From: Vitrella brassicaformis CCMP3155
Taxonomy: Eukaryota; Protista; Chromerida
Reading direction: 5' to 3'
Assembly: GCA_001179505.1 (NCBI GenBank)
Contig: CDMY01000500.1
Span: 1 to 64,000, forward strand
DNA: 64,000 nt
Notes under the pieces: generated by a model
What the model was told of the DNA's origin: nothing
The model's input: only the letters and a program-made list of their open reading frames with translations
Databases searched by the model: none
Shown: in pieces, positions 33,147-40,479 of the stretch
Layout: each line of letters begins with the position of its first letter
How positions within the stretch are numbered: position 1 is the stretch's first letter
Position numbers and translations under genes: made by a program

Positions 33147-35244
33147 ATGCCACGCCCTCCATGCCCTTTTCCCCTTTGCTGTGTGCTCCTCCTTGCCACT
33201 CTCTCGCGATGTCAGCTCACACCAAAAGCGGAGGAACAACTCGAGAAGATAGTCGACCAAGTCGGCACACTCTTGACGGGCCGGCGAGAGAAACCTGGGA
33301 CTGAAGGTTGATGAAGCTCCCCAGTTGCCTGCGTAGGTATGTGCATGACATTGTATGCTTTGTTCCAGATGCCCCGATAGCGCCAGCGAACGGCTCCAGC
33401 CTCGGGTGTCCAGTGTTCAGCATGGTGCCTCCGCAGCCCAAAAGTGACGGTCGAGTCGACTTTTCATCCGCACCCGCAGAGACCCTGCCCGCAGACAGCG
33501 AGCACTACATCGCCCTGCAATTGGTGGGGGGTGCAAAGCGAAGCACCCACACAAGTAAAGCGACCAAAGCTCTTGGGTGCCGTCTGTGCATGGCATGCAG
33601 AGCCGGGCCGAGATGATGGGCTTCACCCACGTCATCCTTGCAGCCAACTCGCGAAGCGGCAACGCCGACATCCTCGTGCAGTCACACAATGGGTGGATCT
33701 GAACGCACAGAAGGCGGGCGGCATAGGTACCCTTTTCTTTGTCTGTGTCATGACAGCACGGTGTACGGGCGATCGAGCGCACCTTCTGATGGTGACAATG
33801 GGCTGTATGAGGATTATGTGGTGCTGCCTGTGGAGAGCGGGGCGACGGCCCATGCATTCGTCGTCCCTGTCGGCAACACACACGCCGATGTGGTCAGTCA
33901 ATTGCAGTCAGCGGACACACACACGGATCCATCTCTGTCGGCCTGTCTGAGTGCCTGTGTGTCCTCTGCCCATGTGTGTGTGCAGACGGTGTTGCTGTCG
34001 TTCCACAAAGACGGCGATTGTGTGGTGCCCTTCAAGATCACCGGCCTCGACAAACCCGTCAGCGACCCCTCAGTCGACCTGAGCGACAACGCAGCGCCGC
34101 AGCTGGCGGACGACGCTCCTCGCCCACTGCCGAACACTTCGATGCCCACATTCGCCACTTACAAGCAGCTGCCTGGGATGCCTGAGGGGCAAGCGGCTGT
34201 GGCCAAGCGATTGATCGACGGCATCAGACAGGGCAACGACACAGCCCAGCTGTTGGAGAATGGCGGGCTGGAGCCGGCGGAGTATCGACTTGCCGAGGGT
34301 GTCCTCCACACACTGTGGAAGGCCAAGGTCAGTGGAGGCGGGTGTCATGGTTGCCGGCCGGCTGTAGTGCGTGGCGTGGAATGGTCTCTGCAGGACGTCC
34401 CGGACCCCGAGCAATATTATTATGACTAGTCCGCGAGAGAGACGGGAGGGTGAGAGAAAGCAGACACGACCGTGCATGTTGCCATGTCGTTCTTGCAGCT
34501 ACTATTATTCTTATTACGGATAGTAAGACAAAATGAAGGCAGGCCGGCCGGCTCCCAGCGTGCAAGTGCCCATTCGTTTGTGTCCCTGTCCGCTCCGCTC
34601 CCTCCAGCTACCCCTACTAGTAAGTGTCGCTCACTATAGCCGCACACACAGCTTTCAGGGCTCACGTGTTGCGTTGATCTGATCCGTCGTATTTTCTGTC
34701 AGCTATTATTACTCCTACCCCTATTATTACATCTAGTCAGCGCAGCGCACAGCACACACTGTCGACACATGGGCCGAACTTATGGGTCGTTGTTGTGTGT
34801 GTTGATGTGCCTGCTGCTGTTGGCTCCCCCATTCTTATGCCGGCAAACGGCAGCTACTAGTGAGTCGCACACACACAGAGACACGACCGCATCTTGATGG
34901 GATGCACACAGAGACTGTGTGTGTCTCTGCCTGCCTGCCTGTCTGTCTGTATGTCTGTCAGTTACTACCCCTACTAGTAAGTGAAGACCTAACAAAGGGC
35001 GGTACAGGTGAGCCTGCAGATGCGATTGTCACTCCTGTCCCTCCTGTCCTGCATCGATATCGGCGCTCGTCTCATCTGAGCAGCTACTACTAGTAAGGAA
35101 CCCTTACTAGTACTACTATTATTAGTGCGTCTGGGCTCTGCGAAAAGATAAACATGGCCCTGATTGATCTCTTTCGTTTGTGTTGTGTGTGCGCGCGTCT
35201 GTGTGTGTGGTTCTGTGTGCAGCTACCGGCTAGGAGCCCAATAG
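33147..35244 (+). CDS. Secreted protein with a PPC-like domain and a poly-tyrosine C-terminal tail encoded by micro-exons
   Basis: Signal-like MPRPPCPFPLCCVLLLATLSRCQ; SGNADILVQSHNGTVYGRSS...NGLYEDYVVLP resembles a pre-peptidase C-terminal module (tentative). Exon 34394-34428, micro-exons 34499-34522, 34608-34619, 34703-34735, 34854-34859, 34962-34976, 35084-35092, terminal exon 35223-35244 (YRLGAQ*). Confidence 0.75.
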
Positions 35245-35938
35245 GATCCGGGAGAGCAGAGAGTGGTGGTCTAAGGCGTCTGTTGTCCTTTTGATTTATG
35301 TACTGTCTGCTTCTGTGTACCAGCACGTTTGTATGTATTTATGTGTGAGTCGAGCCAAGGCCTCAAGTAGATAGAAATCGGCCTTCTTTCCTTCTTTGTA
35401 GGCATGTTGGCGCTATGCTGCATGAGTATATGTATGTCAAGTAGGTCGTCCGCCTTGTGCCGTGACGTGCCTCGATATTCCATGTGTGCTTGTTGGTTGA
35501 GGGAGGGGTTTTCCGAGTCTTTCAGATAGCGACGAGGGACGGGCGATAAAAGACACGCCGTCTCACACTCGCTGACTCGCTCCCCTTCCATGAGTGTGAT
35601 GAGCTGGGTGGGTCGGGTTTGTCGGAGAGGGAGTGCGAGAGACAAGGGTCAGTTCATGGGTCATGCATGTAGTCACATGAACTCACACCCATCCAGCCTC
35701 TCGCCTCTCTCTCCCGTCTGCTGTCTGCAGCAGCCTCCCGCCTGACCCGCTCTATCGGCCTTACGGGCACACATCACACACACACACACCCCACTCATTC
35801 ACCGACCAAAATGCCTCACTCACTCATCAATCAAACACACAAGACAAGACACTGACAAGGCAAGACAAGACCCACGCACAGTGTTGCGATTGATTGAGCT
35901 AGCTAACGTACGTACAGGCCACGCACCGCACTGGTCGG

Positions 35939-37278
35939 TCATGAAGACGGCACGGTCACCTGTCCAGTCCCGTTGACGAGCTGCCCACCTTCCCCGCCCA
36001 GCCCGTAGTTGCGCGTGAGGGAGTCGCGGATGGGCGGCTCCATCCCATTCAGCATGGTCGTCCAGGCGGCCGCATCCACCTGCTGCCGAAGAGCTGCAGT
36101 CAGTGCAGTCAGGTCAGAGCCAAGAGAGAGAGGGATGGGTGAGTGTGATGATCTCCACTCCGTGTGTGTGTGTGTGTGTGTGTTATGGGGGGTTGGTTGC
36201 ACCTGTGATGACTTCGTGGAAGAGTTGCGCGAGGTTCTTTGGAGGGTTTGGGATGGACGCCAGCGAGTGGAGTAGCACAGGAATGTCCTTCATGGCCACG
36301 CTCGGGTTGGCCTTGATCAAGGCGTACAGACCTGCACACACACACACACACAGATACACACACGGGGGGATGGATGGATGGATGGATGTGTGTGTGTGGG
36401 TCCCTCTGCCACCAGGTCCCTACCGTGGAATGCGTTCATCTTTTCGTGGTCGTTCCTGGCGTAGATCATGATGAAGCACCAGCGGCTGTAGAACTGCTCC
36501 AGGTGAACCGCCACCTTAGCAGTGCACACCAACCCCAATCGGCCCTGCACACACACACACACACGTCTCTCTCTGTGCTCTGTGCGGGGCGCCCATCCGT
36601 CCGTCCCGCATCACATACGCTGTCTGTCTGCCTGTCTGTCCGACCAGTGTGATGCATCCGTTCTGGAGCAGCGATCTGTGAAGGTTTTCCCTTCTGACGA
36701 CGGTGATGAGCTGAGCGGTGATCTGGTCGACGTAGGGGCTCATGATGTCGCCCCCGCCGTGGACGGCGATCTCTCCTATCGCCCAGCTGGCGTTGTTGCA
36801 CACAGACACAGCCGAGTGCACCAGGTGCTGCGTCAGCTGACACACACACACACACACCACACCACACACACAGAGGCAATGCGTCCCCCTCTCTCTGTCT
36901 GTGTGGTGCGGGTGTGGGTGTGGCGGGGGGCGCTTGGTGACTGCCTTACCTCTGGCATGATTTGTGGGAGGTATGGTTTGAGCTGCTCCATGGCGCGGCC
37001 GGAGACGTCGCCCACCAGGGCGAATGACGACTGCTTCACCTGCATGTTAGAATCCTGGACAGGGGAGGGACAACACGGCGTCGTGTGGTGTGGTGTGGTG
37101 TGGTGTGTTGCTCGGCTTGATCTGATCTCGGGTCTCCACCCACCTGGCAGCACCGTGCGAGCAGTGGGATGAAGTCGTGTGTCTGCAGCAGCTGCGGGGT
37201 CTTCTTGTCCAGAGCCTCCACCACCGCCCCCAACGCGTCCAACGCCGCGCCCAACATATCTCGACGCGGGCGCTCACT

Positions 37279-37310
<32 letters not shown>

Positions 37311-40248
37311 GGATGCACTCCAGTGCACCGCAACCCTTGTGTGTGTGCGCATGGAAGCTGACCATTGCCTGTGTGGCGGATTTGTCGATTTCGTCAAGTA
37401 CGCAGTTGGTTGTCCGGATGCAGCGGACGATGAAGGGCTCCATGTAGGGGATGAAGTCCTCCCCCAGTGCGTGGCTGACGGCCGTGAGGCACTCGAATAT
37501 CGGGATCAGCTGCACGTCGTGGTCGGTGGCCTGGGACAGCCGGTGAATCAGTGGCGGGATCAGCGCCTACGGCATCCACGCCAGGATGCACACACACACA
37601 CAAGGTACCTTCCTGGCTGTCCAGTCTATGCAGTGTTCCCTCTCTCGCGAGAGATCTCCCTCGGCGGTTGTTTGGACCTCGATCTCACCTCAATGTACTG
37701 TTTTTGCCTGAGGTAGCTGCCCACTGCCTCCGCAAGAGTGCCGATCGCGTCATAAAGAATCAGCACATTCCGGGCCTACCAACCAACCAACCACACACAC
37801 ACACACACGGTCACACAGACGAACACCAGAGGGAGAGGGGAGAGGGCAGAGGACGCGCCCGCCCTTGCTGACCTGGTAGATGTTGAATGCGGCGACAAGG
37901 GTGTTAATGATGTCCTGCAGGTATGGCACGAGGAGGTCGCGCGCCTCCTCCTCCAGCGTGGCGAACGCGCTGCACGCCGCCTCCTGCACACGCTTGTTCC
38001 GGTCACTCATGTGGCTCAAGATCTATGGACACGGCAACACACACAAGGGAGACACACACACACACACACACAGATGGGTGGCGGGGCCGGGCCGGGGCGG
38101 GGCGGGGCCGGGTTGGCCAAATCACCCTCTCTCTCAGTCTGTTGCCTCTCACCTCTGCCAGGACGGTCTTGAAGTATCTGTCTCGGTTGGGCTTGTCGCA
38201 GATCCACACAGAGAACCGGGAAATGCACCAACACGATATCGTCCGAATCAAAGGCTACAACCACACACAGAGAGAACACACACAGACCAAGCACAGCAAT
38301 CCGCACATCGATGTGTGTGTATGGTTTGAGGGCGTGTGTGTGTCCGTGAGGTCTGGGGGCGAGCTTGCCTTCGGTTCTCTCGTGAGAGTGAGGAGGAGCT
38401 CGATGACCTTTGGCAGGAACTGGTTGAGCCCGGCCATGCAGCCCTGGGCTATCGCGCCAAGACACAGCACAGCGCTCTCCCGCACATCCCAACTCTCTGC
38501 CCGCAACCGCTCCTATCACACACACATACACACACACACACACTCATCAACTTTTGCTTTGTCTCCTCTCCCTGTGTGTGTGTGAGATGTGTGTAGGTCC
38601 ACCCACCTACCTCTATCGGCCCGAGTAGCTGGGGCAGAATGCTGACGCCGTAGTGGGTGCTGAGGTGGTCTAGCGCCAGTGCAGCCGACTTGCGCACCGT
38701 CCAGTCGCCGCCCCATGCCCCCCGCTGCGTATCGTCGCCCTCGTCCTCGTCAACACTCTCCTGATGACACACCAACCAGTGTGTGTGTGTGTGTGTGTGT
38801 ATGGGCGTCTTACTTGGCCTGCTCTCGGGTGTGACTGGTGGAATCTGGGTCCGATGTCGTGGGCCTCGTCGGGGACGGCGGTGTTGTCGTCCTCGATCTG
38901 ACTCACATCCATCGCCAGGTAGTCCCATTCGGTGTAGACCGTGTGGCGCAGCAGCACCGGGATCAGCCTGATAAACACGACATCACACAAATCAAATCAG
39001 CGGATGATGCAATCACACGGGCGGGTGTGATTGCCGAACCACCCTACTTACTTTGGGAGGAACCTGGCGAGCTCGTTCCTGCATTGGTCGTGTTGGATGA
39101 CGGGTTGCCAGAACTCCATGGCCTCCATCCTGAGGTTGTACGACTCGCTGTCGCTGCACCCTATCATGAACTCCAGCACCGCATCCACCGCAGTCAGTAT
39201 CAGCTGCACACACACACACACAGACACACACAGACCATCCCTCCCTCCCTCCCTCCCCACTGCAGCCACACCACACTCACGCAGCTCACCTCCATGTTGG
39301 TGTCGGCGAGGGATCCAAACCCCGTGCACACCAGCCGCTTAATGTTGGGGTCAGGGTCTGTCGCCAGCTGCCCCAGCGCCTCCCAGTAGCTCCGCAGCGA
39401 CCCGTGGAACGGCTCCCCCACGTCGAATGCCCGGTGGTTGGCGAAGTAGTTGAGGCACTGGATGGCGTACTTGCGGCACACGGGCCTGGCGCCGGCCTGG
39501 CAGAAGGCGAACAGCTTCGGGAACAGGTGGTGGGCCACGAACGACTGGAAGTCGGTGTCGTGCAGGTAGCGCAGGCCGTCGGTCTCGTCCTCGCAGACCT
39601 TGCATAACGCCGAGAAAGAACTGCACCCACACGCACACGCCCATGCGCCGCAGCCACGTGGTGTGGTGTGGTGTGGTGTGTCTGCCTGCGTGTGTGTGGT
39701 GTGGTGTGGTGTGGTGTGCCCACCCGTCGACGATGTCATCGTTCGCGTCGTCGAGGCTTGCGAGGAGCGCCGTGAGGGCCTCGGGCCACCCACCGGCACC
39801 ACCGGCCATGATGATGGTCGTTATCGCAGAACCTGCACACACACACACACACTCACGGGACAGATATGGCAGACCTCTTCCCCAGTCTGTCTGCCTGTCT
39901 GCCTGTCGGTCTGGCTGACCTACCTGCAGTGGACCGAATAGACCTGTTAGGGTCCCTGATGACGGCAAGCAGCTTGGCCTTGATATCTGCCAGCCTGTTG
40001 GGCGGCAGCGACGCCCAGTCGCTCCTGACTCGGTTCTTGAGCATCAGCCCGACCCGCTGCCGCACATCGGGGCTCTCCTCGGGCATCATGGCGAAGATGT
40101 GACCCAGGTAGTTGAGCGCATCCGGCAGGGCGAAGAACTCATTCAGGTGCGCGTTGATCTGCTGCTGCACCGCGGTGTCCGGGGTGGAGGCCTGGCGCAT
40201 CAGCTGCACCAGGGTGGACAGGTGCTGCGGGTTCGGCTGCCACGCCAT
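35939..40248 (-). CDS. TNPO1: Transportin-1 (importin beta-2 / karyopherin beta-2)
   Basis: MAWQPNP...[15 protein letters not shown]; acidic H8 loop [19 protein letters not shown]...DEDEGDD...[16 protein letters not shown]; [18 protein letters not shown]; [21 protein letters not shown]; [11 protein letters not shown]. Confidence 0.95.
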
Positions 40249-40479
40249 AAGAGATAGGTGTGGGCAGGGAGGGAGGGACGCCTGATTGTCAGTCAACCAA
40301 TGGTAGTGACGCCGACCGGGAGATCTGGCGGCAAAGATGTGCCGTGATCTCAGCTATCGAGGTGACATCTAGCAGCACACTGCACACCCGGGTTCTCTTC
40401 TTCTTCCCTTTTGCGCATGCGAGCTAAGAAGAGGTCTGCGAGCTTAGCGGACAGACGGAAAGCAGCAGACGCCGTGACC
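40249..40479. promoter_or_regulatory. Candidate bidirectional promoter between TNPO1 and eIF4G
   Basis: About 230 bp between divergent start codons, free of microsatellites, with a pyrimidine tract and TGCGCATGCG; function inferred from position only. Confidence 0.4.

What the first reader, a model, noticed from the sequence alone, without database searches (positions are those of the whole stretch)
34394..35244. Poly-tyrosine tail assembled from six symmetric micro-exons (micro-exon gene architecture in a secreted protein)
Seen in sequence: after the last ORF-track exon (...DVPDPEQYYYD) come six short segments, each bounded by YAG and GT: 34499-34522 (24 nt), 34608-34619 (12), 34703-34735 (33), 34854-34859 (6), 34962-34976 (15) and 35084-35092 (9). 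They are separated by 70-130 nt introns and followed by a terminal exon 35223-35244. All are multiples of 3 and in phase 2. Spliced, they give DVPDPEQYYYDYYYYSYYGYYPYYYYYSYPYYYIYYYYYPYYYYYYRLGAQ* (31 Tyr in 39 residues). The protein has a signal-like N-terminus. Established: symmetric micro-exon arrays generate variant secreted proteins in schistosome MEGs, and Tyr-rich domains are dityrosine cross-linked in coccidian oocyst walls (Eimeria GAM56/GAM82). Inference: a wall or adhesive structural protein whose cross-linking valency is tuned by combinatorial exon skipping (up to 64 in-frame tails). The ORF track misses it entirely.
Basis: partly seen in the sequence, partly recalled or inferred. 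Interest (0 to 1): 0.92.

Follow-up and report, generated by a model that had tools for sequence, protein, structure and literature searches.

The report
Poly-tyrosine micro-exon tail behind a stop
A secreted-protein gene of the alga Vitrella brassicaformis ends in a chain of tiny tyrosine-coding exons (down to 6 bases) that really are spliced into its mRNA, but every assembled transcript keeps a stop codon ahead of the chain, so the poly-tyrosine tail is at best a minor or conditional product.

Summary
The sequence observation is correct, and most of it is backed by RNA. The window is Vitrella brassicaformis. After exon 6 (from 34394) lie six 3n, phase-2 segments of 24, 12, 33, 6, 15 and 9 nt made almost only of Tyr codons. 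This pattern occurs six times in 64 kb, all here; shuffles give 0.045. Transcript contigs from four sequencing runs and one JGI assembly show the joints 34619^34703 and 34735^[34854-59]^[34962-76]^[35084-92]^35223 exactly. One run also uses the acceptor at 34499. So 11 of the 14 proposed tail splice sites are confirmed.

The link from the ORF to the tail is not confirmed. The in-frame donor at 34429 is never seen. Transcripts either leave 34394-34619 unspliced or use a donor at 34450. The 85-nt intron 34523-34607 is retained in every contig. The TAG at 34427-29 therefore closes the ORF at ...EQYYYD in all assembled mRNAs.

Two paralogues (P0002, P0003) carry Tyr-rich tails at the same position; mRNA confirms P0002's, so the tail has a coding origin.

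Best reading: a splicing-gated or minor-isoform tail. Main rival: a recently orphaned 3'UTR relic. No exon skipping was seen. The scan had noted this same stretch before (s1-201626, s1-201749, s1-239581).

The parts
33147..33306 (+). Exon 1, with the start codon and a signal-like N-terminus (MPRPPCPFPLCCVLLLATLSRC...)
   Evidence: Joint 33306^33369 in RNA contigs X1 and X7. Translation. Similar N-termini in P0002 mRNA, P0004, P0006, P0008 and P0013.
33369..34327 (+). Exons 2-5 (33369-33523, 33601-33692, 33757-33892, 33986-34327), encoding the conserved PPC-like beta-sandwich and helical region
   Evidence: All joints are seen in RNA contigs. Family alignment A3. Structure model with pLDDT 76. 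Fold matches.
34394..34428 (+). In RNA it runs on to 34449 (X7) or to 34619 (X6, L004).
   Evidence: Acceptor 34394 confirmed. The donor at 34429 was never observed.
34427..34429 (+). In-frame TAG stop, present in every assembled transcript
   Evidence: P0001 (the JGI model of this gene) ends ...EQYYYD.
34429..34498 (+). First gate intron. The proposed in-frame donor GTCCGC at 34429 is unobserved. The observed alternative is the 49-nt intron 34450-34498 (donor GTGAGA), or full retention.
   Evidence: X7 joint 34449^34499. Retention in X6 and L004. A GTCCGT donor is used elsewhere in Vitrella, at L009:6038.
34499..34522 (+). Micro-exon 1 (24 nt, YYYSYYG)
   Evidence: The acceptor is used in X7. 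The donor 34523 is not seen used.
34523..34607 (+). Second gate intron (85 nt, GTAAGA...CAG), retained in all RNA contigs. A local hairpin at 34517-34592 covers the donor.
   Evidence: Contiguous in X1, X2, X6, X7 and L004. Hairpin of -30 kcal/mol, z = -2.57, equalled by 3 of 200 shuffles.
34608..34619 (+). Micro-exon 2 (12 nt, YPY)
   Evidence: Donor joint 34619^34703 in X1, X2, X6, X7 and L004. Its acceptor is not seen used.
34703..34735 (+). Micro-exon 3 (33 nt)
   Evidence: Both joints are in all RNA contigs.
34854..34859 (+). Micro-exon 4 (6 nt, CTACTA)
   Evidence: First 6 of the 30 letters between 34735 and 35223 in X1, X2 and X6. Exact chain alignment of L004.
34962..34976 (+). Micro-exon 5 (15 nt)
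   Evidence: The X7 contig ends exactly at 34976, where a partly unspliced form branches off.
35084..35092 (+). Micro-exon 6 (9 nt)
   Evidence: Joint 35092^35223 in X7.
35223..35244 (+). Start of the terminal exon. In the Tyr frame it reads Y-RLGAQ-stop. The exon continues as 3'UTR to at least 36096.
35100..35131 (+). Degenerate Tyr-codon unit inside the last intron (..TACTATTATTA|GTGCGT) with no AG acceptor. It forms an inverted repeat with micro-exon 6 and its donor.
   Evidence: Repeat family D3 and inverted repeat I7.

Best explanation
This is a Vitrella brassicaformis gene for a secreted protein. It has a signal peptide and a PPC-like beta-sandwich domain, and it belongs to a small family found mainly in chromerids, whose members carry low-complexity C-terminal tails rich in Tyr or in Cys and Tyr. 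In this copy the Tyr tail has been broken into six symmetric phase-2 micro-exons plus a terminal exon. The spliceosome removes the five distal tail introns efficiently. The two proximal introns at the boundary between ORF and tail are handled poorly: the in-frame donor GTCCGC at 34429 loses to retention or to a donor 21 nt downstream, and the 85-nt intron 34523-34607 stays in. The major mRNA therefore encodes a tail-less protein ending ...EQYYYD, and the micro-exons sit in its 3'UTR. The full poly-Tyr protein (346 aa) can arise only when both gate introns are removed in frame. I infer that this happens in a minor isoform or at a particular stage, for example during wall building, where the tail could serve oxidative Tyr cross-linking. 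Shown: the gene structure, the micro-exon splicing, the retained stop, and the Tyr tail of P0002 in mRNA (P0003's tail is annotated only). Inferred: that the gated isoform exists, and what the tail does.
For: Organism and paralogues. Micro-exon joints. Retention of 34523-34607 in 5 of 5 assemblies, and TAG 34427-29 kept in all of them. P0002 splices the homologous donor (CTA|GTGGGT) and its Tyr-rich tail is in the mRNA (L002 against L001). P0003 also has a Tyr-rich tail. There are 35 tail codons with no stop, although 2 of every 9 single-base changes in TAY give a stop, and all exon lengths are multiples of 3. The gene body uses no CTA or TTA among 31 Leu codons, so Tyr is the frame of origin. 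A GTCCG donor is used elsewhere in this genome. A hairpin lies over the donor of the retained intron. The pattern is far above chance.
Against: No contig shows 34428^34499 or 34522^34608. The retained intron has near-consensus splice sites, so its retention is unexplained; the hairpin is only a weak lead (z = -2.6). The available runs are only assembler contigs, which drop minor isoforms, so the gated isoform is neither seen nor excluded. A fourth paralogue (L009) is a decayed, tail-less copy, which shows that this family does lose tails. No proteomic or cross-linking data exist.
Confidence: 0.5

Rival explanations
1. Orphaned coding relic. The gene once had a translated Tyr tail like its paralogues. 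A change in the exon-6 donor (GTCAGC-like to GTCCGC) and failure to splice the next intron fixed the TAG as the real stop. The micro-exons are now 3'UTR exons that are still spliced and have not yet decayed.
For: All five assemblies keep the TAG and the 85-nt intron. The end of exon 6 with its donor resembles the end of micro-exon 3 with its donor, apart from A to C at +4, and the micro-exon 3 donor is always used. Paralogue L009 has lost its tail and is frameshifted but still transcribed. A dead Tyr unit lies inside the last intron.
Against: The tail shows no decay at all: no stop in 35 stop-prone codons, all six exon lengths are 3n, and all 14 splice motifs are intact. GTCCG donors work in this genome. 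A stop followed by five or six exon junctions would usually be costly, yet transcript depth is as high as over the upstream exons.
Confidence: 0.3
2. The tail is a constitutive part of the protein, and combinatorial skipping of symmetric micro-exons tunes its length (up to 64 variants), as in schistosome micro-exon genes.
For: All micro-exons are 3n and in one phase, so any skip keeps the frame. Micro-exons 3 to 6 are included in mRNA.
Against: There is no assembled isoform with a skipped micro-exon. The same chain, from the micro-exon 2 donor through 3-4-5-6 to the terminal exon, is seen in X1, X2, X6 and L004; the X7 contig breaks at the end of micro-exon 5. The ORF is closed upstream of the chain in all assemblies.
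Confidence: 0.07
3. The fully spliced form is in fact abundant, and the retained-intron paths are an artefact of how de Bruijn assemblers resolve bubbles in low-complexity sequence.
For: Contigs X1 and X2 start at 34486 and 34492, just before the 34499 acceptor, and the X7 contig breaks where two forms coexist. Logan contigs drop the rarer variants.
Against: Four Logan run assemblies (at least three samples) and one separately held JGI assembly (which may derive from the same reads as X1 or X2) all chose the same retained path. The same assemblers resolved the equally low-complexity chain of micro-exons 3 to 6 in its spliced form.
Confidence: 0.1
4. The retained-intron mRNA carries a downstream ORF. 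It starts at the ATG at 34533 and reads the micro-exons in the Leu frame, giving a 75-aa peptide with a poly-Leu core.
For: The ORF is open across the spliced micro-exons in the observed isoform.
Against: It would use only CTA and TTA Leu codons, which appear 0 times among 31 Leu codons in the gene body. It lies downstream of a 306-codon ORF. TAY repeats are open in all three frames by construction.
Confidence: 0.03

Closest known systems
Schistosome micro-exon genes (MEGs; bioRxiv 10.1101/2023.06.21.545858)
   Same: Runs of symmetric exons with lengths that are multiples of 3, down to a few bases, in a gene for a protein with a signal peptide. Any exon skip would keep the reading frame.
   Different: Only the last 121 nt of a 1041-nt conceptual CDS are micro-exons. 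The introns are 49-130 nt rather than kilobases. The encoded sequence is a homopolymer-like Tyr tract. No skipping isoforms were seen. There is no sequence homology, and the host is an alveolate alga. The chain lies behind a stop codon in the major mRNA.
Coccidian tyrosine-rich oocyst and sporocyst wall proteins (Eimeria GAM56/GAM82, EtSWP1, Toxoplasma TyRPs; PMC2726925, PMC4776368)
   Same: A secreted protein with a Tyr-rich region in a relative of Apicomplexa. Oxidative dityrosine cross-linking is a plausible use for such a tail.
   Different: No detectable homology: the family profile finds only 12 representatives, and the three Vitrella members scanned have no Pfam domain. Here the Tyr content is concentrated in a short C-terminal tail. 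Cross-linking, wall location and stage of expression are all untested.
Regulated or detained intron retention that introduces a premature stop
   Same: Specific introns stay in polyadenylated transcripts while the neighbouring introns are removed, and retention truncates the ORF.
   Different: No evidence yet that retention is regulated or ever relieved. It may simply be a failing splice site.
PPC (pre-peptidase C-terminal) and P-domain-like beta-sandwiches, such as the collagenase collagen-binding domain and the Tk-SP C-terminal domain
   Same: The predicted fold of residues about 38-135 matches these modules. It carries a G-(D/N)-A-D-(I/L/V) motif.
   Different: TM-scores are low (about 0.3), E-values are only 5e-5 to 1e-2, and there is no Pfam hit. 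The domain stands alone, without a protease.

Membership tests
Schistosome-type micro-exon gene (MEG) | Most of the coding sequence is built from symmetric micro-exons lying between ordinary terminal exons | tested here: not met
   The exons are symmetric (6 of 6 are 3n), but the micro-exons make up only 99 nt (121 nt with the terminal piece) of the 1041-nt conceptual CDS. Exons 1-5 are 92-342 nt long.
Schistosome-type micro-exon gene (MEG) | Protein variants produced by micro-exon skipping | tested here: not met
   X1, X2, X6 and L004 show one and the same inclusion pattern; the X7 contig agrees as far as micro-exon 5, where it ends. Minor isoforms cannot be excluded from contigs alone.
Schistosome-type micro-exon gene (MEG) | Secreted product with a signal peptide | tested here: inconclusive
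   A hydrophobic N-terminus is seen by inspection and is conserved in the paralogues. No signal-peptide predictor was available.
Coccidian Tyr-rich wall proteins (GAM56/GAM82 type) | Sequence homology to the family | tested here: not met
   A profile search of 1.84 billion representatives gives 12 hits, all of this small family. A Pfam scan of P0001-P0003 finds no domain.
Coccidian Tyr-rich wall proteins (GAM56/GAM82 type) | Dityrosine cross-linking into a wall, with stage-specific expression | not testable with these tools
   This needs proteomics, UV autofluorescence and stage-resolved RNA.
Chromerid PPC-like secreted family with low-complexity C-tails (P0001-P0013) | Conserved domain (..GF..V.LA.NS..G.AD..V...YED.V.VP...C.VPF.I) following a signal peptide | tested here: met
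   Alignments A1 to A3. Profile E-values of 7e-138 to 2e-4.
Chromerid PPC-like secreted family with low-complexity C-tails (P0001-P0013) | A translated Tyr-rich tail after ...LWKAK-x-EQYYY | tested here: inconclusive
   Met in P0002, where mRNA L002 confirms it, and in the P0003 gene model. In this gene the tail is encoded, but the major mRNAs place it behind a stop codon.
Retained or detained-intron regulated transcript | Particular introns are retained in mature RNA while the neighbouring introns are spliced, and this creates a premature stop | tested here: met
   34523-34607 is retained in 5 of 5 assemblies. 34429/34450-34498 is retained, or spliced in a way that keeps the TAG. The five distal tail introns are spliced.
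Retained or detained-intron regulated transcript | Retention is relieved by a signal or at a particular stage | not testable with these tools
   Only assembler contigs from bulk cultures were available, and both read-laying runs are used.

The most novel reading that the evidence does not exclude
A splicing-gated cross-linking module. Two detained introns at the boundary between ORF and tail keep a secreted PPC-like protein tail-less in vegetative Vitrella cells. Removing them at the wall-building or sporangial stage would append a 35-residue, 80% Tyr tail assembled from six micro-exons. That would switch the protein into a form that can be cross-linked into the wall. It would also point to a wider habit of this genome, which appears to encode low-complexity peptides as arrays of symmetric micro-exons.
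Probability: 0.3. Interest if true: 0.8.

Novelty: new variant of a known kind. Interest (0 to 1): 0.6.

Why it matters
The locus gives RNA-verified 6-, 9- and 15-nt exons in a chromerid, strung together to spell an almost pure poly-Tyr peptide. My literature searches found nothing on micro-exons, intron retention or Tyr-rich proteins in Vitrella. The public protein collection holds no model of this gene with the tail. If the tail is translated conditionally, this is a compact natural example of splicing switching a structural property of a secreted protein, namely its capacity for cross-linking. It would also link chromerid wall chemistry to the Tyr-rich oocyst walls of the apicomplexan relatives. 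If the tail is a relic, the locus captures a coding tail at the moment it is orphaned into a 3'UTR that is still spliced. That would bear on how micro-exons and introns are gained and lost. In either case it warns annotators that ORF-based and standard gene models miss such tails. The annotated stop of P0002 also sits on a TA|GT.

Tried and rejected
Two metagenome-contig scans found nothing: one for the junction of micro-exons 1 and 2 and one for the verified junction chain of micro-exons 3 to 6, used as a positive control. Because the control also failed, that collection lacks these transcriptomes and the negative result means nothing. Pfam gave no hit for P0001-P0003. Literature searches on Vitrella or chromerids combined with microexon, tyrosine-rich, dityrosine or intron retention returned 0 papers. 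Folding the whole stretch 34394-34740 showed no unusual structure (z = +1.34); only the local hairpin over the intron-2 donor stands out slightly. The tail introns share no similarity beyond their splice-site edges, so recent tandem duplication and an introner burst are both rejected. The Leu-frame and downstream-ORF readings are rejected on codon usage. Read-through of the TAG was considered, but nothing in the sequence context supports it. P0004 could not be traced to a contig. The near-identical environmental DNA in X13 has too few differences to test for constraint. The built-in TAG at every junction is not treated as design, because it follows automatically from a phase-2 intron inside a TAY codon.

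Full report
**What is in the sequence**

From 34394 the + strand reads cag|GACGTCCCGGACCCCGAGCAATATTATTATGACTA|gtccgc. Six short segments follow. Each is preceded by a pyrimidine-rich (Y)AG and ends in ...TA|GT:

| Segment | Coordinates | Length (nt) |
|---|---|---|
| Micro-exon 1 | 34499-34522 | 24 |
| Micro-exon 2 | 34608-34619 | 12 |
| Micro-exon 3 | 34703-34735 | 33 |
| Micro-exon 4 | 34854-34859 | 6 |
| Micro-exon 5 | 34962-34976 | 15 |
| Micro-exon 6 | 35084-35092 | 9 |

The last piece, 35223-35244, ends in TAG. All segments start in phase 2, and all lengths are multiples of 3. A regex for this unit finds six copies plus one overlapping variant in the 64-kb window. All lie in this stretch. 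Block shuffles give a mean of 0.045.

**Organism and gene**

Homology searches place the window in Vitrella brassicaformis CCMP3155. The gene starts at 33147. Exons 1-5 are 33147-33306, 33369-33523, 33601-33692, 33757-33892 and 33986-34327. Every one of these junctions is seen in RNA contigs. The N-terminus looks like a signal peptide. So do those of the P0002 mRNA and of P0004, P0006, P0008 and P0013.

**RNA evidence for the tail**

Contigs of four RNA-like runs (X1, X2, X6, X7) and one JGI transcriptome contig (L004) were laid on the window. L004 may come from the same reads as X1 or X2.

- X1, X2 and X6 show the joint 34619^34703.
- X1, X2 and X6 also show a joint 34735^35223 with 30 letters in between. 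Those letters are CTACTA + TTACTACCCCTACTA + CTACTACTA, which are micro-exons 4, 5 and 6 to the base.
- My exact spliced alignment of L004 recovers the same chain, 34703-34735 / 34854-34859 / 34962-34976 / 35084-35092 / 35223 onward.
- X7 adds 35092^35223 and the use of the acceptor at 34499.

So 11 of the 14 proposed tail splice sites are verified, including a 6-nt exon.

**The entrance to the tail is not verified**

- X6 and L004 run unspliced from 34394 to 34619.
- The X1 and X2 contigs begin at 34486 and 34492, inside the first tail intron, and run unspliced to 34619.
- X7 splices 34449^34499. This uses a GTGAGA donor 21 nt downstream of the proposed one, so the TAG at 34427-29 stays in the mRNA.
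- In all five assemblies the 85-nt intron 34523-34607 is retained, although it has GTAAGA...CCCTCCAG ends.

Retention of 34523-34607 and splicing of 34619^34703 must occur on the same molecules. Micro-exon 2 is only 12 nt long, so single 31-mers span both features.

The major mRNA therefore encodes a 306-aa protein ending ...EQYYYD. The JGI model P0001 has that same C-terminal end. The micro-exons lie in the 3'UTR of this mRNA. Contigs drop the rarer variants, so a minor in-frame isoform is not excluded. X7 shows that these assemblies break where two forms coexist, as at 34976, and no such break is seen at 34522.

**Is the tail coding in origin? Yes.**

- Paralogue P0002 (383 aa) continues after ...LWKAKDVSDFEQ with a long Tyr- and Pro-rich tail.
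- Its mRNA contig L002, aligned to genomic L001, shows that the homologous donor (...CAATACTACTA|GTGGGT) is used. It is followed by exons of 71, 94 and 66 nt.
- P0003 also ends in a Tyr-rich tail, encoded by three small exons.
- The body of this gene uses neither CTA nor TTA among its 31 Leu codons, so the alternative Leu reading of the repeats is implausible.
- The 35 tail codons contain no stop, although 2 of every 9 single-base changes in TAY create one.
- A GTCCGT donor is used at L009:6038, so GTCCGC at 34429 is a credible, if weak, donor.

**Signs of turnover in the family**

- The end of exon 6 with its donor (TATTATTATGACTA|GTCCGCG) resembles the end of micro-exon 3 with its always-used donor (TATTATTACATCTA|GTCAGCG).
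- A third, degenerate copy without an acceptor lies inside the last intron at 35100-35131.
- A fourth paralogue (L009; P0005 and P0007) is frameshifted and tail-less, yet transcribed.
- The tail introns are otherwise unrelated to one another. Neither recent tandem duplication nor an introner burst explains the array.

**Why the two proximal introns are handled poorly**

This is not settled. The first has a weak donor that competes with a stronger one 21 nt downstream. For the second, the only lead is a local hairpin at 34517-34592 that covers the donor. It folds at -30 kcal/mol with z = -2.57, matched by 3 of 200 shuffles. The wider region shows no unusual structure.

**The protein**

A profile of the conserved region finds only 12 cluster representatives among 1.84 billion proteins. 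None of the three Vitrella members scanned (P0001-P0003) has a Pfam domain. Several representatives carry Cys- and Tyr-rich C-termini or two tandem copies of the domain. One of them, P0004, is also a Vitrella transcript, as a loose end in X7 shows. An AlphaFold model built on 12 sequences has pLDDT 76 and shows a beta-sandwich followed by helices. Foldseek matches are weak but consistent, with E-values from 5e-5 to 1e-2 and TM about 0.3. They include PPC domains, the collagenase collagen-binding domain, the C-terminal domain of Tk-SP and the P-domain of Kex2. A binding module joined to a Tyr-rich tail fits a wall or matrix protein, but that is inference.

**Comparison with known systems**

- Like schistosome micro-exon genes (10.1101/2023.06.21.545858), the exons are symmetric and the product has a signal peptide. 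Unlike them, only the tail is micro-exonic, the introns are short, no skipping is seen and there is no homology.
- Like the coccidian Tyr-rich wall proteins (PMC2726925, PMC4776368), the protein would be Tyr-rich and secreted. There is no homology, and no biochemical data exist.
- The pattern of selective intron retention that creates a stop matches retained or detained-intron regulation in form. Whether it is regulated here is untested.
- No paper in the searched library mentions micro-exons, intron retention or Tyr-rich proteins in Vitrella.
- Other first-stage notes report further micro-exon arrays in this genome. I did not check them.

**Verdict**

| Reading | Confidence |
|---|---|
| Tail of coding origin; entry needs two poorly spliced gate introns, so the poly-Tyr protein is a minor or conditional isoform | 0.5 |
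| Freshly orphaned relic, now a spliced 3'UTR | 0.3 |
| Assembler bias hiding an abundant spliced form | 0.1 |
| Poly-Leu downstream ORF | 0.03 |

Noticed in passing
L001:4775-4925: The annotated stop of paralogue P0002 (..CCCCCTTA|Gtatgt) again sits on a TA|GT, and the mRNA contig L002 ends exactly at that TA. Downstream, cag|CTACTATGGAAGCAACGGCGACCAGAACGTCTGA would add YYGSNGDQNV in frame. The public model is probably truncated at a splice donor.
   Followed up: partly
L009:5999-7080: A fourth Vitrella paralogue (pieces P0005 and P0007) is frameshifted and lacks both the LWKAK motif and any Tyr tail. It is still transcribed (L005-L008). It looks like a decaying copy.
   Followed up: partly
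window 35085-35131: Micro-exon 6 with its donor (TACTACTAGTAAGG) forms a 14-nt inverted repeat, 93% complementary, with 35102-35115. The second arm begins a degenerate Tyr-codon unit that has no acceptor. CTTACTAGTAAG is a perfect palindrome, because TAC is the reverse complement of GTA.
   Followed up: no
window 34533-35300 (spliced): In the observed intron-retaining mRNA, an ATG inside the retained intron opens a 75-codon ORF that reads the micro-exons as poly-Leu. It would need CTA and TTA codons that the gene body never uses, so it is probably meaningless.
   Followed up: partly
window 35940-40403, - strand: A convergent importin-beta/HEAT-repeat gene lies here. Its transcript overlaps the 3'UTR of this gene, and the two assemble into one contig (L004). 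One of its introns appears to be GC-AG (donor gcaagc just downstream of the exon ending at 38369).
   Followed up: no
window 33804-35454: Marine-sediment metagenome runs from 2025 (X13-X15) hold DNA about 99% identical to this locus. Vitrella, or a very close relative, is present in those environmental samples.
   Followed up: no
window 33147-35244: The public protein collection returned no NCBI gene model for this locus within 123-476 aa, only the JGI transcript ORF P0001, whose N-terminus comes from a retained first intron. The reference annotation may lack this gene or model it wrongly.
   Followed up: partly
window 33307-33368: The first intron of the gene is retained in the JGI contig L004 but spliced in X1 and X7. 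Partly spliced polyadenylated RNA seems common in these Vitrella data sets.
   Followed up: no
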